Under the pieces are notes generated by a model, which was not told the origin of the DNA, searched no databases, and was given only the letters and a program-made list of their open reading frames with translations. A program made the position numbers and the translations under genes. A DNA stretch of 64,000 nucleotides from the IMG/VR virus record IMGVR_UViG_3300024999_000030, positions 186,001-250,000 of that record; one strand, written 5' to 3'. Each line of letters starts with the position of its first letter. Positions within the stretch are counted from its first letter, which is position 1. Below, piece by piece: positions 28,236 to 46,482 of the stretch.

Positions 28236-29127
28236 GTGTTGTGGCTATAATTTGTGGCTATCTAACATTAATCTACAATAGGAGAATAAAAATGGATTGG
28301 ATCGTAAATCTTATCACCGAATGGAAGTGGAATGGATTTATGTCACTTTTACTTTATTGGCTCCCGCTTTCGTTCTGTGTAGTCGGTTATACTTTACGTA
28401 CCGCCCGAAATTATATTAGAGATAAAAGAAGACTCGCGGAATATTTAAGCAGCAGGGGCAATAAGGTTGCTAAATCTAAAGAAATTATTTATCCAAGACA
28501 AGAATATTATCCTACCGACACCATAGGAACCCTTATTGGTAGATCGATTGTTTCCATTGTTCCTATCGGAAATCTTTGGGCTGCATTGTTTGACCTTGCC
28601 CCCGAAGTCTTTCGTAAGTTTTTTAAGTGGCTCGGCAAAGTATTTGATTTTCCGCTTGTGCCTGGACCGAAAGAAGATGCCTAAAGTAGACATTGACGCT
28701 CTAGAAAAACTTTACAATGAATCTACTCCGGGGCCATGGATAGTTAGGGATATGAAATTTGTTCATGCCCCATGCCCCTGTTGTGGAGATGTTGCTGAGT
28801 GCGTGCAGTATGGCCCAGGAAATGATAAGGAAAACTACAATACAGAAATTATCGTGGCGATGCACACAGCCCTACCGCACCTCATTACTGAACTAAGAGC
28901 CGCAAGAAGAAAGAATAGGAAAAAGTAAATGGAAAATAAATACAAACAAGTGTTGGAGACTTATAGATGCTTATTGAGTTGCAGAAAAAATCTTCCAGGA
29001 CTTAGCCTAGAAAGCGCATTTAATGAAGATGCCGTTAGGGATTTGGAAGAAGAATATGCTTGGCTGCAACAACAAAAACAATATGAAAGCCATACCGGGA
29101 TTAATTGTCCTCCTCCATAATTTAAAA

Positions 29128-29385
29128 GTGGACCTCGCCAGTGTGTAAGTAGGCACTCCCAGAATCATTTACAAGGGGGAGACACCGACGGCTGGAAGGT
29201 AGTATAATATTTATACTATCATCTGGTGAGATGCCCCATTGGAGGCCTAGCTTCGTCAAATCTCCATCGCGGTAAGGTGGAAATGATGGGCGGACTAGAA
29301 GCCCTCTGTCGCCACCGCTCTAGTGAAGATTGTTCCTAGAGCCGGCTCGTCGATGTAAGTCGGCGAGTCGTAATGTAGGAATAAA
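29128..29385 (+). ncRNA. Candidate structured RNA D
   Basis: CTCGCCAG/CTGGTGAG, CTCCC/GGGAG, TAGTATA/TATACTA, CCATC/GATGG, GCTCTAG/CTAGAGC, CTCGTCGA/TCGGCGAG. Confidence 0.5.
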
Positions 29386-29412
29386 TCTAACTTAACTTAT
29401 ATCGGAGATAAC

Positions 29413-29589
29413 ATGGCCAACAAACGGTGGGAAGAATACGGTCACGTGGTTGAAGAAGTTAGAAGTGAGTGGCATAAGGTGATTTATGTAGATGGTGTTC
29501 AGGTTAATGAGACTTTCAGTGAGGCTATTGGAAGAATTATGGCCGAGGAAAGTTTAAAGAAATTAATGAATCCAAATCCTAAACAGTAA
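29413..29589 (+). CDS. 58-aa hypothetical protein between two structured RNAs (not in ORF track)
   Basis: GGAG SD, ATG 29413, MANKRWEEYG...NPNPKQ stop. Confidence 0.55.
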   Translation: MANKRWEEYGHVVEEVRSEWHKVIYVDGVQVNETFSEAIGRIMAEESLKKLMNPNPKQ

Positions 29590-29592
29590 CAC

Positions 29593-29828
29593 CACATTAA
29601 CGCGGGAAGTAGGCTTAAGGGCAGCCATCTTTTAAAGAGTGAGGGCTGGCCATGTGCAGATAATATCGTCTTCGTTCGCAGGGTAGCATAAGAAGACCGA
29701 AGGATAGATTTTTAAAAATTCACAATCTATCTGGGGACGGCCATGGGCACCACTTGCAGCAAACAGAGGATTGTCAAGGACAATCTGTACTGTTCCTCTC
29801 TGGCGTAAAAGCACACCTCGTTAATGTG
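29593..29828 (+). ncRNA. 23S rRNA L11-binding (GTPase-associated centre, H43/H44) mimic with 162-nt insert
   Basis: GGAAGTAGGCTTAAGGGCAGCCATCTTTTAAAGAGT(G)...GCGTAAAAGCACAC versus remembered E. coli 23S ~1055-1104 GGAUGUUGGCUUAGAAGCAGCCAUCAUUUAAAGAAAGCGUAAUAGCUCAC; closed by perfect CACATTAACG/CGTTAATGTG. Confidence 0.8.
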
Positions 29829-30072
29829 TTTTAAATATTTGATAATGGGAGAGATAAAATGCCCACAAATAAAGTAGAAGTATTAATGGGGTCTTATGAA
29901 TCACCTAGGCCAGTAAAATGTTGTATTTGCCATTGCCCCATGTATTACATAGGGGATATTAGATATGAAGCAGAGATAAAAATGGAATTAACAAGTCATG
30001 AAATACCTTCAGTTGATCATGAAATTTTTTATGCTCATGCCAGATGTTTAATGCCATTGATCGGAGGTTGAA

Positions 30073-35546: not shown

Positions 35547-37079
35547 ATGGAACGTAAAGTAAAAACTGGTCCAAAAATTATTGGTCTCGCTTTACTTGTT
35601 ATTGGCCTTATCTTCGGTGGAAAGTGGGTGTTGAACAACACTAATATTATTCCGAAGGGATCTAGTGGTACAAGCAAATCTTTCTTTAAACACGCTAAGG
35701 AACCTCTTAAGGTTTGTGTGGTTACCTGGGGAGGTTATGCTGGTGGTCAGTATTATAATCGTGGTTTCAAACCGAATGACGACTCTCAGTATCTGAAGAA
35801 GTATGATCTTCCTGTAGAGTTTGTTGTTATCGACGATTATAACGCATCCAGAGAGGCGTGGAAGGCCGATGCAGTCCAGGTGCTGTGGACTACTGCTGAC
35901 TCGTTTCCGACCGAAGCTGGGGCACTACAGCGCGCCGGATACAAACCTAAAATCATTTTTCAGTCTGACTGGTCCCGTGGTGGAGATGTCATTGTTAGTA
36001 CCCGAGTTATTAACTCCATTCAGGATCTCAAGGGTAAGCGAGTTAGTGTTGCTTTCGGCACCCCATCCCACACCTTCCTGCTGCGTTCGTTAGAGGCGGT
36101 AGGTATGACGGTTAAAGACCTCAAACTTATTGAGGTTCCGTCTGCTGTTGATTCTGCCACGGCCTTTAAGGCTGGACAGGTTGAGGCGGCGGTGGTGTGG
36201 TCCCCTGACGATGAAGACTGCATTAGTAAGGTTTCAGGAGCTAAGGCTCTCGCTTCCACTAAACAAGCTACCCATATCATCGCCGATGTTTTCTATGCTA
36301 AGGAAGAAATTATTGAGAAGCGTAGAGACGACATCAAGGCTTTGGTAGAAGGTTGGATGATTGGTGCGGCGGAAGTTAACTCTAGCCCCACTGCCCGCTC
36401 TCAGGCTGTTAAGATTCTGGCCGAGGGTTTGAATCAACCTGATGGTTTCATTGATCAGGCAATTAACAATGTTCGCTTAAACACCTACGGAGACAATGTG
36501 AACTTCTTTAATCTTCGTGGAAGTTTTACTGGTGTAACTGGCGAACAGCTTTATCTTGAGACCGGTAGATTGTATCAGGAAAATACCAACCTGGTTCCAG
36601 ATGGTATGCCTTCCTGGAGAGTTATTAGCGATGCCAGTATTCTTCGTGATATCAATCTCACTGGCGTTAATGATGGTGCTGAATCTGACTTTAAGTTCTC
36701 TCAGCCCACCAAGTCTCTTGAAACCGCTCCAGCTCTTAGCACTAAGCGTTTATCTGTGAGCTTCGCCACGGGCTCAGCCTCTCTCGATGCCAACGCTAAG
36801 ACGATTATTGACCTTGGGTTTGTTCCCACGGCTAAGTCGTTTGCTAGTGCCCGCATCAGAATCGAAGGTAACACAGATAGTACGGGTAGTGCCTCGACCA
36901 ACGAGCGTCTTTCCTATCTTCGCGCTAAAGCTGTTGCTGGATATCTTTCCGAGCAGTATGGATTTGACAGCAATCGTTTCGTCATCGTTGGTAATGGTCC
37001 CAATAAACCAATAGCTGACAATGACACCGAAGAGGGCCGTTCTGCTAATCGTCGCACCGATTTTGAGTTGGTGCGGTAA
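35547..37079 (+). CDS. ABC substrate-binding (SsuA/NMT1-THI5-like) - OmpA C-terminal fusion
   Basis: N-terminal TM anchor; DLKGKRV..AFGTPSH..L; C-terminal FATGSASL..IEGNTDSTG..NERLSYLRAKAV..NRRTDF OmpA motifs. Confidence 0.88.
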   Translation: MERKVKTGPKIIGLALLVIGLIFGGKWVLNNTNIIPKGSSGTSKSFFKHAKEPLKVCVVTWGGYAGGQYYNRGFKPNDDSQYLKKYDLPVEFVVIDDYNASREAWKADAVQVLWTTADSFPTEAGALQRAGYKPKIIFQSDWSRGGDVIVSTRVINSIQDLKGKRVSVAFGTPSHTFLLRSLEAVGMTVKDLKLIEVPSAVDSATAFKAGQVEAAVVWSPDDEDCISKVSGAKALASTKQATHIIADVFYAKEEIIEKRRDDIKALVEGWMIGAAEVNSSPTARSQAVKILAEGLNQPDGFIDQAINNVRLNTYGDNVNFFNLRGSFTGVTGEQLYLETGRLYQENTNLVPDGMPSWRVISDASILRDINLTGVNDGAESDFKFSQPTKSLETAPALSTKRLSVSFATGSASLDANAKTIIDLGFVPTAKSFASARIRIEGNTDSTGSASTNERLSYLRAKAVAGYLSEQYGFDSNRFVIVGNGPNKPIADNDTEEGRSANRRTDFELVR

Positions 37080-39782: not shown

Positions 39783-40601
39783 ATGTTCTTCACCGACTAT
39801 GGACAAATATTAGAAAGCTCATTTCCCTGCGGAGAGAAAAATGTTAATGATTTTAAAGTCATGGGACATTCACTTTTGGCAGCGAGTAACATCAAATGGA
39901 AGTGGGAATCTGATTCAGAACTAATCACGCTCATGTTGATAAAAAAGCTCTATCCAAATATTTTAACTCTTACAATTTTTTACCTCCCATATGGAAGAGC
40001 TGACAGGAACGAAAAAGGTGGAAGTTCGTGCTCGCTAAGATATGTCGGAGATTTTATTCAATCACTTGGATTCGAGAAAATTACAGTTCTCGATCCCCAT
40101 TCCGATTTATCGATTGCATACCTTGGCGAATCTGCGTGCTCATATTATCCAAAATCTGAACTGCTTACAGGGCTTGGCGTTAACTACACGCCAAAAAATT
40201 CAGTAGTAATGTTTCCTGATTCTGGAGCACAAAAGCGTTATGGCAAAGCCTGGTATGGATATCTGCATGTCTTAGGTTCAAAGACCAGGGATTTTCGAGA
40301 CGGTAAGCTCACTGGTTATTCTATCGCGGATGGGGTTCCAGCAGAAGGCAAGCATGTTATTATAGTTGACGACATTTGTTCGTATGGTGGTACATTTATA
40401 CTTGCCTCAAACGCTATCAGAAAATTCAATCCGTTGTCAGTGGCACTTGTTGTAACTCACTGTGAAGACAGCATTTTCAATGGTGATGTTTTAAAGGCTG
40501 GTAGCCCAATCGATCTTGTCGTCACAACAAATTCCCTAATTACTAAAGAGGGATCTTCTAAACTTAAAATCGTAGATGTTATAAAAACAGGAGGGAACTA
40601 A
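39783..40601 (+). CDS. Ribose-phosphate pyrophosphokinase-like protein (putative Adps of NARP1)
   Basis: FPCGE, YLPYGRADR, DPHS, FPDSGAQKRY, IVDDICSYGGTF; adjacent to the NAMPT-like gene. Confidence 0.85.
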   Translation: MFFTDYGQILESSFPCGEKNVNDFKVMGHSLLAASNIKWKWESDSELITLMLIKKLYPNILTLTIFYLPYGRADRNEKGGSSCSLRYVGDFIQSLGFEKITVLDPHSDLSIAYLGESACSYYPKSELLTGLGVNYTPKNSVVMFPDSGAQKRYGKAWYGYLHVLGSKTRDFRDGKLTGYSIADGVPAEGKHVIIVDDICSYGGTFILASNAIRKFNPLSVALVVTHCEDSIFNGDVLKAGSPIDLVVTTNSLITKEGSSKLKIVDVIKTGGN

Positions 40602-42071
40602 TGCCCAGAATCCCAATGCTTATGGCCGACTTCTATAAAATAGGCCATAGAGAACAGTATCCAGATGGAACACAAACCGTGTATTCAACTTGGACGCCGA
40701 GAGCAAGTAGGGTCGAACCAATAAAACATGTAGTTGCCTTTGGGTTCCAAGCCTTTATTAAGAAGTATCTCATTCAGTTTTTCAATGAGAACTTTTTTGA
40801 AAGACCGAAGGCCGATGTGGTTTCTGAATACAAGAGGGTAATTTCTTCAACTCTTGGGATAGGGAACCCGCATACCCAACATATCGAAAGGCTTCATGAT
40901 CTCGGATATCTTCCAATTAAAATTATGGCTGTGCCAGAAGGCACCAGAGTCCCACTTCGAGTTCCGATGCTCACAATAGAAAACACAGGCTCGGAGTTTT
41001 TCTGGCTCACAAATTTTCTTGAAACACTTATGTCTTGTGAAATTTGGCTGGCAAGCACGAGCGCAACAACCGCAGCCGAGTACAGAAAAATCCTGGATCA
41101 CTATGCAAAGTTGACTGGTGATCCAGAGTTTGTTAAATTCCAAGGGCATGATTTCAGTTTTAGGGGCATGGCGTGCTTAGAGGCTGCTGAAATGAGTGGA
41201 GCGGGACATCTTCTCAGTTTTGTTGGAACAGATTCAATTCCAGCCATCACATATCTAGAGGAATATTATCACGGGAATGTAGAGAAAGAATTAATTGGAT
41301 GTTCAGTGAACGCTACTGAGCATTCTGTTATGTGTGCTGGGGGGGGCTAACAACGAATTTGAAACATATAAGCGACTGATGTTCGATGTTTATCCAACAG
41401 GGATACTTTCAATTGTCTCTGACACTTGGGACTTCTGGAATGTCTTATCTAATATTATTTTTCCACTAAAGGATGGAATAATCAAGCGTGATGGAAAGAT
41501 TGTCATTAGACCAGATAGTGGTGACCCAACTAAAATAATTTGTGGGGATCATGATGCTAACAACCTCCTCGCATATAAGGGGGCCATCGAAGTTCTTTGG
41601 GACATATTTGGAGGTACCGTTAACGATAAAGGATATAAATGTTTGGACCCACACATTGGTCTGATTTATGGTGATGCCATCACCCTTGATCGATGTAGGG
41701 AAATTTGCAGCGGGCTCGAAGCAAAGGGCTTCGCATCCACAAATGTCGTCTTTGGTATTGGGTCATATACATATCAATGTGTAACACGTGATACATTTGG
41801 CTTCGCTTTAAAATCAACCCATGTTACAATTAATGGAGAAGATGTAAACATCTTTAAGAATCCACTAACTGACTCCGGGTCCATAAAGAAGTCGGCAATT
41901 GGAAGGGTGGCTGTCCTACAGAAAGACGATGGGGAACTTTATTTGTCCGATGGACATGGCCGGGAAGAAGTTCCTGGAAATCTCTTATCTCCTATTTTTG
42001 TGAATGGTGTATTAGTTAAAGAACAAACACTTGCAGAAATTCGCGAAAGACTTACTTCTGTAAAAACTTAA
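40601..42071 (+). pseudogene. nadV: Nicotinamide phosphoribosyltransferase-like protein (putative Namat), split by +1 frameshift at G8 (41339..41346)
   Basis: DFYKxxH, HDFSFRG, ATEHSVM | SIVSDTWD, IRPDSGDP, LIYGDAIT, KKSAxG. Removing one G restores CAGGANNEFETY. Confidence 0.88.
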
Positions 42072-42083
42072 ATTAGAAATATA

Positions 42084-42515
42084 ATGCCAGATAAAATTAA
42101 AGTTACATATTCATCTGGAGTTATTAAAGAAGTAACGGCGACTACCGCAGCTAAGATTTACAGAAGGCAAGCCAGACAAGCTATTGAACGGGCTATGGCA
42201 CATGATATAGAATATTATGAATTGTTTAACATTTTAAAACATCCCGTAAATGACTATAGATGTCTTATTTCCGAATGTCTTACTGGAAAAAAGGGTTCAT
42301 ATTCTTTTTCTACTTGTGAAGAATGTTTTTTTGAAAGTAAATATGGTTGTGTTCTTAAGCTTATTACTAGTGAGCTAATGACGGAAGATACAGCTAGTTC
42401 CTATATTAAAAAATTACTGGACCTGAAGGGCATCGGCACATTAGAACTTTTTATTATTAAAGTTCATGCGGGGTTGCAAGCCACTGGACTTGGAAACAAA
42501 TCCCAAAAGAGGTGA
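42084..42515 (+). CDS. Degenerate four-Cys family paralogue 20
   Basis: RCL..CL...CEECFF..YGCVL; lacks a clear FIxNP. Confidence 0.5.
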   Translation: MPDKIKVTYSSGVIKEVTATTAAKIYRRQARQAIERAMAHDIEYYELFNILKHPVNDYRCLISECLTGKKGSYSFSTCEECFFESKYGCVLKLITSELMTEDTASSYIKKLLDLKGIGTLELFIIKVHAGLQATGLGNKSQKR

Positions 42516-42551
42516 TTTGTGAGACAACTCACGAGAGCGCCTTAATGTTGA

Positions 42552-42596
42552 TGGCATTATTTTAACCCGTCGGAATAATGCCAACTTAAATGACGG
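42552..42596 (+). ncRNA. Candidate H-type pseudoknot
   Basis: TGGCATTATT/AATAATGCCA stem; loop CCGTC complementary to downstream GACGG. Confidence 0.45.
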
Positions 42597-42868
42597 CCTT
42601 AATTATCCACAATTAGAAAGGAGTTCCTCAAATGGAACAGACCATGGTTAAGTATCGAGTTGTACTTCTCAAAGTTGTTGAGGGCAGTAAAGACAAGATG
42701 ATTCATAGTTTCACTCGCCCCTGTACTCAAAGTAAAGCTGAGAAGATTTTCAATCAGCTTTTGCTGGATTGGGGATTGAAGTACGATAAGGATACGGGCT
42801 TTGATCCCCCGCCTGCCAATGATGCGGTATATCCCGCTATTGTAGCAGTTGAGTAAGTAATAACAAAA

Positions 42869-43603
42869 TTTCTTTCTTCATTCAAACTATTCCCCACATA
42901 AAGAACCATCTCCCTTCCCTCCTAATTATAGGTGAATGAAGGAGTAATGTTCTAGGAAATTGAATTTGATAGAAGAAAGAAAACTCCAATTAGGCCGATG
43001 GCGATTGTTTGAACGCTCAACTCTCGTTTGCGTGAAGACCCACTCAGATCGATTGGCCAGGCGTTTACATGGAAGAGTAGACATGGCTAGAGATATCTCT
43101 CTTGTTTATTCTTTCTTTTATGAGTGTGTTACTCTATTGGGGCGGTTTCGATACCAATCCACAGTATGCGTCCATGATAAGTTATGGAATAGAGATGGCA
43201 TACTCTAGAAGGCGGACGGTCGTGTCCGCCTTCGCCAAACACCTGTATTACTGAGAGGGTGTATGGTTCCTAAAGTTGGAACCATTTACTACATCGTCGG
43301 TTCTTTTGCAGAGAAAAAGGTCAATGGCATGACGCCGCAAAGATTGTTGTGCTTCGGCACACCTTTGAGTCTGGGCAGGCTTATTATATAAGCCCAGCCG
43401 GTTCTGCAATTCCCAACTCGCGCTTATGAATCACAAATCAACGTTGCTACGTGAGTGCAGTCAGGCAGCTGACCAGTAATACTTATTGAATTGACTACCG
43501 GTAGTGGTCATTCAATCGGGGTCATCATGGTGATGACCCCACAATCCGGCTAAAACTAATCTTCTGGTGGAGCCGGGGAAGAGCATGTGCTCAGGAAGAT
43601 TAG
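42869..43603 (+). ncRNA. Large structured non-coding region E (about 735 nt)
   Basis: GAAGGCGGAC/GTCCGCCTTC, ATGGTTCC/GGAACCAT, GTGC-UUCG-GCAC, TTGCAGA/TCTGCAA, GGGGTCATCA/TGATGACCCC, CTAATCTTC/GAAGATTAG. Confidence 0.65.
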
Positions 43604-43620
43604 GGAATAGGAGATAACTA

Positions 43621-44145
43621 ATGTCATATATGGATAGTATTTTTGAAGCAAGTAGTTATAAAAATATTGTTTCTAAAACAGCATTAGTAATTGATAAGAT
43701 TTCCGAAAAACATAATAAACTTTCTATTGTTCATACGGGATTAAGTGGTGGTTTAATTGGCCATCCCGTTGCAATGGCTCTAAAACTTAATAGCATGCAC
43801 ATTAGAAAGAATGATCAGAGTCATGGAGATCCAATAGAGGCTGGATATAGTTCACCCGATAAGCAAATTAAGTTTCCATATGCTATCGTTGATGATTTTA
43901 TGGATAGTGGTGATACCATTAAGAAAATAATTAAGAAAATGAAAAACTTTTTTCCCAAATGTTTTCCGGTTGGAATTGTATTATATGATGAAATCTCTTT
44001 TGATGTGTGGGACCATAAAGTGATTAACTCCGTAGTAAAGGGAGATTTTTCTGTCTATACCTTTTGGCATAAAGCTAAAGGATATAGAGTACACACCTTC
44101 GATGGCAAAGAATGGCATGAATCTAAAACTCTTAAAAAGTTTTGA
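43621..44145 (+). CDS. Type I phosphoribosyltransferase
   Basis: YAIVDDFMDSGDT PRPP-binding loop; TGLSG motif. Confidence 0.82.
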   Translation: MSYMDSIFEASSYKNIVSKTALVIDKISEKHNKLSIVHTGLSGGLIGHPVAMALKLNSMHIRKNDQSHGDPIEAGYSSPDKQIKFPYAIVDDFMDSGDTIKKIIKKMKNFFPKCFPVGIVLYDEISFDVWDHKVINSVVKGDFSVYTFWHKAKGYRVHTFDGKEWHESKTLKKF

Positions 44146-44152
44146 GGCATAA

Positions 44153-44665
44153 ATGTTTCCAATGTATAATATCAATGAATTTATTAATTTGATAGATAAG
44201 TTTTTATCAAACCCGACTATTAATTCCGCTCATTCTTTCTTAACTAATCCCTATATGTTTGGTGGTTTTGGAGCTGCTCCTGGAAGAGTAAGTGCCAAGG
44301 CTATATATTATGATTGTCAATTTCATCATCATGTTCTTGGGGGGCAGGAGAGAAGTCAACAGTATTGTGATCGATGTCCATTTGCTCATAAAGGCAATTT
44401 AGTAACCAAGAATCAAGCCTTCTATTCAAACTGTTCTCTTGTACATTCATTTGTATTATTTGAAGTACCTCCACATTATTCTGATGTTACATGTCTCGAC
44501 ACAAATGAACAATATGGATTATCTAAGTGTTCTCTTGTTAATTTAATTCCAAAGTTAATTATGGGGTTAATAACCATGAAAGCTATTTGTGAAATTAAAA
44601 AAGAAAAACTCCGACAAGTTAATGAAAAAAGGAGAATGTCCCGTGGTAAATCCCAAAACCCGTAG
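44153..44665 (+). CDS. Four-Cys family paralogue 21
   Basis: KFLSNP...DCQF...CDRCPF...NCSL...GLITMKAIC. Confidence 0.75.
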   Translation: MFPMYNINEFINLIDKFLSNPTINSAHSFLTNPYMFGGFGAAPGRVSAKAIYYDCQFHHHVLGGQERSQQYCDRCPFAHKGNLVTKNQAFYSNCSLVHSFVLFEVPPHYSDVTCLDTNEQYGLSKCSLVNLIPKLIMGLITMKAICEIKKEKLRQVNEKRRMSRGKSQNP

Positions 44666-46119: not shown

Positions 46120-46482
46120 ATGTCTGCACAAAATAATTTCATCTTAACAGTAAAGTCTTTAATCAGCGCTGGTAAAAAAATTGAAGCCATTAAGGAAGTG
46201 AGAGAGGTTTTACTTCTTGGTTTAAGGGATGCTAAGGATTTAATTGATGCCTGTGAGGCTGAGAAGAGTATGGAACCGCTCACTAGAGTCGCTAGAAACA
46301 TTGCCTCGCAAACTGTCAAAGGTTCTCCAAGTATTGTATTAGTTGTTTTTGACGGAGAGGATTCTAGTGTATCTTGTCGGCTCTCTATTGGCACCTTTTC
46401 CTGTAAGGATGTGACTGAAGTTCAAATCAAGCGGGCCATTGCTATGATAGGGGCTGCTCAAAATTGCGATGTCCAAGAATAA
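46120..46482 (+). CDS. Protein with ribosomal bL12 (L7/L12) C-terminal-domain-like motif
   Basis: GKKIEAIKEVREVLLLGLRDAKDLID resembles the remembered L12 motif [24 protein letters not shown]; no L12 N-terminal domain. Confidence 0.65.
   Translation: MSAQNNFILTVKSLISAGKKIEAIKEVREVLLLGLRDAKDLIDACEAEKSMEPLTRVARNIASQTVKGSPSIVLVVFDGEDSSVSCRLSIGTFSCKDVTEVQIKRAIAMIGAAQNCDVQE

What the first reader, a model, noticed from the sequence alone, without database searches (positions are those of the whole stretch)
42869..43603. About 735-nt ornate non-coding RNA candidate
Seen: the clearest large RNA in the window, with at least eight strong stems, a UUCG tetraloop, multibranch domains, and a last stem ending next to the PRTase SD. 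Known: the size is in the GOLLD/ROOL/OLE range; I cannot assign it. With regions A-D, the GAC mimic and the twister, roughly 3 kb of this window looks like structured RNA.
Basis: partly seen in the sequence, partly recalled or inferred. Interest (0 to 1): 0.65.

Follow-up and report, generated by a model that had tools for sequence, protein, structure and literature searches.

The report
New large structured RNA in huge phage
A roughly 740-base stretch between two genes of a 333-kb groundwater phage does not code for protein; a related phage keeps its many base-paired stems through matching double mutations, so it is a real, large folded RNA that fits no described family and has an unknown job.

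Summary
Window 42857-43620 lies between a conserved 74-aa gene and a phosphoribosyltransferase-like (PRTase) gene in a 332,730-bp groundwater phage. It folds far better than shuffled sequence. It has one diverged homologue at the same position in a related phage contig (L004).

- **Conservation:** the core, 42993-43603, is 72% identical in nucleotides. The PRTase gene is 62% identical and ordinary spacers are 46-56%.
- **Structure:** the joint fold has 191 pairs, 31 with compensatory double changes and none broken. It scores -219.7 kcal/mol, against -112 ± 8 for column shuffles.
- **Strand:** the + strand is favoured (-219.7 against -182.1 for the - strand; 41 G-U cells).
- **Coding:** no reading frame stays open in both phages for more than 26 codons. 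ORF 42960-43208 is not conserved.
- **Known families:** no Rfam 15 family matches either copy, including GOLLD, ROOL, OLE, introns and RNase P RNA.
- **Limits:** I found only two distinct members and no RNA-seq data. Transcript ends and function are untested.

My best reading is an operon-embedded ornate RNA that works as an RNA or RNA-protein particle. The main rival is a giant leader controlling PRTase translation.

The parts
42632..42856 (+). Conserved 74-aa gene directly upstream (stop TAA at 42854-42856). Unknown fold and function. A possible protein partner, which is inference only.
   Evidence: 77% aa identity to L004 and 58-61% to a third relative on short contigs L008/L009. Substitutions by codon position are 12/8/31, as expected for coding sequence. 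No Pfam, PHROG or NCBIfam hit. AlphaFold model has pLDDT 88 but no PDB fold match.
42857..42992 (+). 5' region I: pyrimidine-rich and less conserved. Local closing helix 42869-42879 / 42972-42982. Conserved strings are AUUCCCCAC (42889-42897) and CUAGGAAAUUGA (42952-42963).
   Evidence: 59% identity. Joint-fold z is only -2.3, and the compensatory count is no better than shuffles, 89 of 200. The closing helix has 2 compensatory changes in its 6 shared pairs. Duplex energy is -13.6 kcal/mol in the window and -17.4 in L004.
42993..43058 (+). Three-way junction. It carries the longest invariant string, UUGCGUGAAGACCCACUCAG (43028-43047).
   Evidence: Closing helix 42993-42999 / 43052-43058 has a compensatory change. 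The 20-mer is identical in both homologues.
43071..43115 (+). Long hairpin of 18 pairs.
   Evidence: 2 compensatory and 2 one-sided changes, none broken.
43122..43205 (+). Y-shaped domain: a 15-pair stem bearing two arms.
   Evidence: 4 compensatory and 5 one-sided changes across its helices.
43208..43232 (+). G+C-rich hairpin of 10 pairs. No U-tract follows, so it is not an intrinsic terminator.
   Evidence: 3 compensatory changes. No + strand terminator-like site in 42000-44300.
43246..43481 (+). Large multibranch domain closed by 43246-43253 / 43474-43481. It contains the UNCG hairpin at 43349-43360.
   Evidence: 64 pairs with 12 compensatory changes and none broken. Joint-fold z is -10.3, and 0 of 200 shuffles reach the compensatory count.
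43492..43540 (+). Two hairpins, 43492-43510 and 43518-43540. Each is preceded by the string CAAUC.
   Evidence: 1 and 3 compensatory changes respectively.
43545..43603 (+). 3' terminal module. Helix S1 (43545-43551 / 43571-43577), helix S2 (43556-43565 / 43594-43603) and hairpin 43581-43592. S1 and S2 cross, so a pseudoknot is inferred.
   Evidence: S1 and S2 each carry one compensatory change and are perfect in both homologues. Region IV joint-fold z is -6.4.
43609..43623 (+). Shine-Dalgarno AGGAG (43609-43613) and ATG (43621-43623) of the PRTase-like gene. They begin 5 nt after the last supported helix.
   Evidence: Read from the sequence. L004 has GGAGGAG in the same place.
43621..44145 (+). 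Divergent type I phosphoribosyltransferase-like gene (174 aa) with an intact PRPP-loop motif, VDDFMDSGDT.
   Evidence: Pfam PF00156 E 1.9e-5, just below the family cut-off. Weak HGPRT, APRT and OPRT-like matches. 58% aa identity to L004.

Best explanation
Window 42857-43620 (+ strand) encodes a genuine, evolutionarily constrained, non-coding structured RNA. It has a ~610-nt core (42993-43603) of at least 20 helices: a three-way junction, a long hairpin, a Y-shaped domain, a 236-nt multibranch domain and a 3' pseudoknot-like module. A looser ~130-nt pyrimidine-rich 5' part precedes the core.

No terminator-like site and no sigma-70-like promoter was found on the + strand between the 74-aa gene and the PRTase-like gene. 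I therefore infer that it is transcribed with them, as an operon-embedded RNA.

My preferred mechanism is inference, not shown. The RNA acts as an RNA in its own right: a large scaffold or RNA-protein particle made during infection. This would resemble OLE RNA, which sits in an operon next to its protein partner's gene, and the phage-borne GOLLD and ROOL RNAs. One of the two tightly linked conserved proteins (the 74-aa protein or the PRTase-fold protein) would be the likeliest partner. The 3' module would also form the structured 5' edge of the PRTase message.

Shown: non-coding status, conservation, stem covariation, strand, and absence from Rfam. Inferred: co-transcription, the pseudoknot, any protein partner, and any function.
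For: - **Excess structure:** z -6.1 and z -8.2, the most extreme of ten gaps in the window.
- **Homologue:** a syntenic copy in L004, with 74-aa gene, RNA and PRTase in the same order.
- **Conservation:** core nucleotide identity is 72%, against 62% for the PRTase gene, 54% for the 143-aa gene and 46-56% for ordinary spacers.
- **Joint fold:** 191 pairs, 31 compensatory, 28 one-sided, 0 broken. Energy is -219.7 kcal/mol against -112.3 ± 7.7 in 60 column shuffles. Compensatory pairs number 31 against 17.1 ± 3.6, maximum 27.
- **By region:** regions II, III and IV have z -10.6, -10.3 and -6.4. Shuffles reaching the observed compensatory count number 0, 0 and 1 of 200.
- **Non-circular test:** taking the fold of the window sequence alone, L004 shows 28 compensatory, 27 one-sided and 46 broken pairs. 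Letter permutation gives 15.7, 15.6 and 69.7, and no permutation of 1000 reaches either the observed compensatory or broken count.
- **Strand:** -219.7 kcal/mol on + against -182.1 on -, with 41 G-U cells and no A-C cell in the + strand model.
- **Not coding:** L004 has stops in all frames opposite ORF 42960-43208, indels are not multiples of three, and substitutions fall 23/27/21 by codon position. The longest frame open in both is 26 codons. TAG=Q or table 4 do not open the region.
- **Transcription signals:** no terminator-like or sigma-70-like promoter site on the + strand between the two genes.
Against: - Only two distinct sequences exist, so many pairs are invariant and every covariation count rests on one pairwise comparison.
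- There is no expression evidence. All eight public runs that hold the locus are DNA, and the three laid on it carry the identical phage.
- No promoter or terminator of its own was found, and the last helix abuts the PRTase SD in both phages. That fits a leader at least as well as a stand-alone RNA.
- Nothing ties either neighbouring protein to RNA binding. The 74-aa model matches no known fold, and the PRTase looks like an ordinary divergent enzyme.
- Region I is poorly supported.
Confidence: 0.5

Rival explanations
1. Giant cis-acting leader of the PRTase-like gene. The folded core brings the pyrimidine-rich 5' part (CUCC-type anti-SD strings around 42906-42925) next to the purine-rich 3' end. 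The SD is then either sequestered by long-range pairing or left free when the local helices form (42869-79 / 42972-82 and S2). A ligand or protein bound by the core would choose between the two states.
For: - The RNA ends 5 nt (window) or 2-3 nt (L004) before the SD, with no terminator in between.
- The unconstrained joint fold closes the molecule by pairing 42874-42893 with 43594-43612, which includes AGGA of the SD.
- Region I pairs with the SD segment at -18.2 kcal/mol (window) and -25.2 (L004). This competes with S2 at -12.8 and -15.6.
Against: - The long-range helices have only 1 compensatory change in 13 pairs, and CU-rich tracts pair with AG-rich tracts non-specifically.
- The competing local helices are perfect in both phages and carry compensatory changes.
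- From my own knowledge, a constrained core of over 600 nt and over 20 helices is several times larger than any known bacterial cis-regulator.
- No known aptamer class is present.
Confidence: 0.25
2. A ribozyme or degenerate mobile intron: a group I or ORF-less group II intron, or some other catalytic RNA lodged between the two genes.
For: The size is in the range of ORF-less group II introns. Phage genomes often carry introns. The architecture has multiple domains with a pseudoknot-like module.
Against: - No match to any intron or ribozyme model of Rfam at E up to 10, in either homologue.
- Both flanking genes are complete, each with its own stop, SD and start, in both phages. There are no exons to join.
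- No domain-V-like hairpin is visible by eye.
- No reverse transcriptase or homing endonuclease ORF, and no copy elsewhere in the genome.
Confidence: 0.07
3. A DNA-level element, such as a replication origin, packaging site or recombination hotspot with cruciforms, rather than an RNA.
For: Both strands fold better than shuffles, z -6.1 and -6.8. This is expected for any set of inverted repeats.
Against: - The comparative fold is 37.6 kcal/mol better on the + strand.
- It uses 41 G-U cells that would be A-C mismatches on the other strand, and 28 one-sided changes keep pairing only through G-U.
- There are no direct-repeat or iteron-like copies, and no copy elsewhere in the genome.
Confidence: 0.03
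4. Hidden protein-coding sequence: small ORFs, or a gene read in another genetic code.
For: - ORF 42960-43208 (82 aa, TTG start) exists.
- A gene caller placed an 81-aa gene in the L004 copy.
- The genome carries a tRNA with a CUA anticodon.
Against: - The two ORFs lie at different places and in different frames.
- No frame is open in both sequences for more than 26 codons.
- Indels are not multiples of three, and substitutions show no third-position excess.
- TAG=Q or TGA=W do not open the region.
- No Pfam or PHROG hit.
Confidence: 0.02

Closest known systems
GOLLD and ROOL RNAs (large ornate RNAs of phages and prophages)
   Same: Size class of 600-800 nt. Many conserved helices and multibranch domains. 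Carried by a phage genome. Function unknown. The properties of GOLLD and ROOL are from my own knowledge and from the abstract listed, which reports RNA-only multimeric complexes seen by cryo-EM.
   Different: No match to either covariance model, even at E up to 10. Not next to tRNA genes: there are none in the window, and the nearest tRNA is about 48 kb away in the genome. Known from two phages only. Multimer formation is untested.
OLE RNA (about 610 nt, embedded in an operon next to the gene of its protein partner OapA; from my own knowledge)
   Same: Similar core length. It lies inside a run of same-strand genes with no visible terminator or promoter of its own, and it is tightly linked to small conserved neighbouring genes.
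   Different: No match to the OLE model. The host is a phage, not an extremophilic Firmicute. The neighbours are a 74-aa protein of unknown fold and a PRTase-like protein, not a membrane protein. No evidence of protein binding.
PyrR-type regulation (a PRTase-fold protein that binds a structured leader RNA; from my own knowledge)
   Same: A small type I PRTase-fold protein is encoded directly after a structured RNA.
   Different: No PyrR-binding motif was found by Rfam. The PRTase matches HGPRT, APRT and OPRT-like models only weakly and does not match PyrR specifically. The RNA is about ten times larger than a PyrR site.

Membership tests
GOLLD RNA | Match to the family's covariance model (sequence plus structure) | tested here: not met
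   No hit in the whole window at gathering score. No hit at E up to 10 on 42500-43900 or on the L004 copy.
GOLLD / ROOL RNA | Usual placement beside tRNA genes in a phage or prophage (from my own knowledge) | tested here: not met
   The phage setting is met. There is no tRNA in the 64-kb window. The nearest genomic tRNAs are at 179.8-180.5 kb, against the RNA at 228.9 kb.
ROOL RNA | Match to the family's covariance model | tested here: not met
   no hit.
GOLLD / ROOL / OLE | Assembly into defined homo-multimers (cryo-EM work listed) | not testable with these tools
   Needs size-exclusion chromatography, mass photometry or cryo-EM of the transcript.
OLE RNA | Match to the covariance model, and adjacency to oapA | tested here: not met
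   No Rfam hit. The neighbours have no family assignment other than PRTase. OapA itself was not searched for by name.
Group I intron | Conserved catalytic core (model match), and interruption of a host gene whose exons join to one frame | tested here: not met
   No model match. The 74-aa gene has its own stop and the PRTase gene its own SD and ATG, in both phages.
Group II intron | Domain V/VI model match, and 5' GUGYG and 3' AY ends | tested here: not met
   No model match. The region starts GUAAU. No domain-V-like bulged hairpin appears among the helices. No reverse transcriptase ORF.
RNase P RNA / tmRNA / 6S / SRP RNA | Match to the covariance models; for tmRNA, a tag reading frame | tested here: not met
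   No Rfam hit. ARAGORN finds no tmRNA. Short resemblances to RNase P strings (GCUGACCAG, CCGGCU) were noted by eye from memory, but they pair differently here.
Known riboswitch or protein-binding leader classes | A recognised aptamer, plus an expression platform (terminator or SD-sequestering helix) | tested here: inconclusive
   No aptamer model matches and there is no terminator. A long-range pairing that would cover the SD is possible but weakly supported.

The most novel reading that the evidence does not exclude
This is the founding member of a new class of ornate RNA of over 600 nt, specific to a lineage of huge groundwater phages. It would be made during infection and work as a self-assembling RNA or RNA-protein machine, or as a new ribozyme, with the adjacent 74-aa or PRTase-fold protein as partner. 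It would not be a mere leader.
Probability: 0.3. Interest if true: 0.8.

Novelty: new variant of a known kind. Interest (0 to 1): 0.62.

Why it matters
From my own knowledge, only about a dozen bacterial or phage RNA classes above roughly 400 nt are known. Each one that has been solved (ribosome, RNase P, group I and II introns, and lately GOLLD, ROOL and OLE) revealed new RNA architecture or biochemistry.

A further covariation-supported RNA of this size, carried by an uncultivated 333-kb phage, adds a candidate for structural work. It also hints that huge phages bring large functional RNAs as well as proteins and tRNAs into the cell. The sequence is short enough to transcribe in vitro, so its fold and oligomeric state can be tested directly even without the host.

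Its weight is limited by the narrow distribution (two phages) and by the lack of any functional clue.

Tried and rejected
**Rfam.** The whole window at gathering score gave nothing. The locus at E up to 10 gave only sub-threshold hits to eukaryotic families, which I took as chance; the best, MIR171_2 at 29 bits against a 65-bit threshold, lies on the hairpin at 43070-43115. The L004 copy gave nothing relevant.

**Paralogues in the 332.7-kb genome.** None by blastn or nhmmer, and none by a covariance model of 43296-43418. That model recovers itself at E 2e-36.

**GenBank phages.** blastn in distant mode found no match.

**Exact-motif scans with four conserved strings.**
- Viral contigs gave only the same phage, plus one chance hit inside a gene, L007.
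- JGI metagenome contigs gave the same phage plus four chance hits inside ORFs of unrelated G+C-rich contigs.
- Species-representative genomes gave nothing for one string. The other string gave two hits without further similarity; the one I read, L051, lies inside a repeat-protein gene.

**Protein-guided search.**
- The PRTase has 2 clusters.
- The 74-aa protein has 3 clusters. The third sits only on 659-705-bp contigs that stop 122 nt into the spacer.
- The N-terminal PRTase fragment found nothing.

**Terminase relatives.** 31 loci were found. Five records had no significant BLAST match, best E 0.1. Five records of distant relatives, two of them the same, had no model match. All these records are fragments, so this says little.

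**Expression.** No RNA run holds the locus. The three DNA runs laid on the stretch carry the identical sequence with no variants.

**Other genetic codes.** TAG=Q and table 4 were tried only to exclude a hidden ORF. They do not open the region, and no other code is proposed.

**Fold of the 74-aa protein.** The model is confident, but no PDB match reached E 0.001.

**The count of structure pairs.** My typed structure was one character short. I replaced it with scripted counts rather than retype a long string.

**Not used.** Complex prediction and the big representative-protein search were not used, because no claim here rests on them.

Full report
**Setting.** The window is bases 186001-250000 of a 332,730-bp virus record. 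Independent assemblies of several groundwater metagenomes hold the same sequence. Genes run almost entirely on the + strand. The finding lies between a 74-aa ORF (42632-42856) and a 174-aa ORF (43621-44145). The second ORF is a divergent type I phosphoribosyltransferase (PRTase): Pfam PF00156 at E 1.9e-5, weak HGPRT/APRT/OPRT-like matches, and an intact VDDFMDSGDT loop. Upstream lie a PRPP-synthetase-like gene and a split NAMPT-like gene.

- The 764-nt spacer 42857-43620 folds at -265.2 kcal/mol against -208.8 ± 9.2 for dinucleotide shuffles, z -6.1.
- In my own scan of ten non-coding gaps and four coding controls it is the most extreme, at z -8.2. The other gaps range from +0.7 to -3.0.
- G+C rises to 0.485 at 43201-43600, in a genome of 0.38.

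**A homologue.**
- Motif and protein searches found one diverged relative, contig Ga0071344_1000166 of JGI sample 3300005259 (L004). It has the same order: 145-aa gene, 74-aa gene, an 849-nt spacer, then the PRTase gene.
- The spacers align over about 600 nt at 70% identity.
- The core 42993-43603 is 72% identical. The PRTase gene is 62%, the 143-aa gene 54%, and two ordinary spacers 46-56%. The stretch is therefore under purifying selection.

**Is it an RNA structure?**
- RNAalifold on the pair gives 191 pairs. Of these, 31 changed on both sides and still pair, 28 changed on one side and still pair, and none is broken.
- The joint energy is -219.7 kcal/mol, against -112.3 ± 7.7 for 60 shuffles that keep the pattern of conserved, variable and gapped columns. 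Compensatory pairs number 31, against 17.1 ± 3.6 with a maximum of 27.
- Split into four parts, regions II (42993-43245), III (43246-43481) and IV (43482-43608) have z -10.6, -10.3 and -6.4. Their compensatory counts are 11, 12 and 5, and 0, 0 and 1 of 200 shuffles reach them. Region I (42857-42992) is not significant.
- A consensus fold selects for covariation, so I also ran a non-circular test. I took the fold of the window sequence alone and asked how L004's changes fare in it. The result was 28 compensatory, 27 one-sided and 46 broken pairs. Permuting letters among the variable columns gives 15.7, 15.6 and 69.7, and none of 1000 permutations reaches either the observed compensatory or broken count.
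- The UUCG loop becomes UACG, still in the UNCG family, with a compensating G-C to A-U change in its stem.

**Which strand?** The + strand. The comparative fold is 37.6 kcal/mol better on + than on -. The + strand model contains 41 G-U cells and no A-C cell. This also argues against a DNA-level cruciform element.

**Is it coding?** No.
- Opposite ORF 42960-43208, L004 has stops in all three frames. Indels have lengths 4, 3, 1, 1, 1, 14 and 2. Substitutions fall 23/27/21 by codon position, against 12/8/31 in the 74-aa gene.
- The 81-aa gene called in L004 lies elsewhere (window 43222-43472), and the window has stops in every frame there.
- Over the whole spacer, no frame on either strand stays open in both sequences in one register for more than 26 codons.
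- The genome carries a tRNA with a CUA anticodon, so I checked TAG=Q and also table 4. Neither opens the region. The window's genes read normally in table 11, and I propose no other code.

**Architecture**.
- Region I has a local closing helix, 42869-42879 / 42972-42982. It is 11 perfect pairs in the window, and the 6 pairs shared with L004 carry 2 compensatory changes.
- A three-way junction (42993-43058) bears the longest invariant string, UUGCGUGAAGACCCACUCAG (43028-43047).
- Next come an 18-pair hairpin (43071-43115), a Y-shaped domain (43122-43205) and a G+C-rich hairpin (43208-43232).
- A 236-nt multibranch domain (43246-43481) follows, then two hairpins (43492-43510 and 43518-43540).
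- The 3' module has two helices that cross: S1 (43545-51 / 43571-77) and S2 (43556-65 / 43594-603). Each has one compensatory change, so I infer a pseudoknot.
- The unconstrained consensus instead closes the whole molecule by pairing 42874-42893 with 43594-43612, which covers part of the SD. That pairing has only one compensatory change in 13 pairs and competes with the better-supported local helices. However, CU-rich region I can pair with the AG-rich 3' end in both phages, at -18.2 and -25.2 kcal/mol, against -12.8 and -15.6 for S2. A conformational switch cannot be excluded.

**What it is not.**
- No family of Rfam 15 matches at gathering score anywhere in the window.
- None matches meaningfully at E up to 10 on the locus or on the L004 copy. 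GOLLD, ROOL, OLE, HEARO, raiA, group I and II introns, RNase P RNA, tmRNA, 6S RNA and the known riboswitches are therefore all excluded as families.
- An intron is further excluded because both flanking genes are complete in both phages.
- There is no tRNA in the window and no second copy in the genome.

**How widespread is it?** Very narrow, as far as I could see. Four conserved strings scanned through IMG/VR contigs, JGI metagenome contigs and species-representative genomes gave only the same phage and chance hits inside genes. GenBank phages gave nothing. Records of terminase relatives gave nothing either, but they are fragments. A third relative of the 74-aa gene exists only on 659-705-bp contigs that end 122 nt into the spacer.

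**Expression.** This could not be tested. All eight runs that hold the locus are DNA, and the three laid on it carry the identical sequence.

**How it most likely works.**
- **Shown:** a constrained, non-coding, + strand fold.
- **Inferred, transcription:** no terminator-like or sigma-70-like promoter site lies on the + strand between the 74-aa gene and the PRTase gene, so the RNA is probably part of one transcript with them. Phage promoters may escape that scan.
- **Inferred, function:** a core of over 600 nt and over 20 helices that is better conserved than the gene behind it is, to my knowledge, far beyond any known bacterial leader. It is in the class of OLE, GOLLD and ROOL. I therefore prefer an operon-embedded RNA that acts as an RNA or an RNA-protein particle, about 0.4-0.5. 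The two tightly linked proteins are candidate partners.
- **Main rival:** a giant translational leader for the PRTase gene, about 0.25. It is favoured by the conserved abutment to the SD and by the possible long-range anti-SD pairing.
- **Less likely:** a ribozyme or intron relic, a DNA element, or hidden coding sequence.
- I put the claim that this is a real structured RNA at about 0.9. The stated confidence of 0.5 covers the whole statement, including the mechanism.

**Novelty and score.** This is a new RNA family of the loosely defined kind "large ornate phage-borne RNA of unknown function". It is not a member of any described family. I rate it a new variant of a known kind, with interest 0.62. 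The points in its favour are strong comparative support, a rare size class and direct testability in vitro. The points against are two members only, no expression data and no functional clue.

Noticed in passing
window 39783-42071: A PRPP-synthetase-like gene (39783-40601) is followed by a NAMPT-like gene split into two overlapping ORFs in different frames (40601-41350 and 41334-42071). The split is identical in an independent ENA assembly. The pair resembles the phage NAD+ reconstitution pair (my own knowledge). The whole block is absent from the relative L004, where the ABC-transporter genes run straight into the 145-aa gene.
   Followed up: partly
G000:C1:14708-14783 (outside the window): One of the phage's 29 tRNA genes has a CUA anticodon (ARAGORN labels it 'Pyl'), so it is a possible amber suppressor. 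Genes in the window read normally in table 11, and TAG=Q does not open the RNA region.
   Followed up: partly
window 46120-46482: A 120-aa ORF with a weak ribosomal protein L7/L12 (PF00542) assignment, conserved in L004.
   Followed up: no
L004:5152-5210; L008:584-705: L004 has about 59 extra bases right after the 74-aa gene. They carry the string CCUGACCACGGGA...GUGG, which is shared with the third relative (L008/L009) but absent from the window. It may be a small hairpin or pseudoknot element of its own.
   Followed up: no
window 36000-36760: A coding stretch inside the 510-aa phosphonate-binding/OmpA-like gene, with G+C 0.47, folds with z -5.1. That is unusually low for coding sequence here.
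   Followed up: no
The 'GAC mimic' was not examined.
   Followed up: partly
window 28929-29858: A 930-nt gap without a + strand ORF of 70 aa or more folds with z -3.0, the second most structured gap in the window.
   Followed up: no
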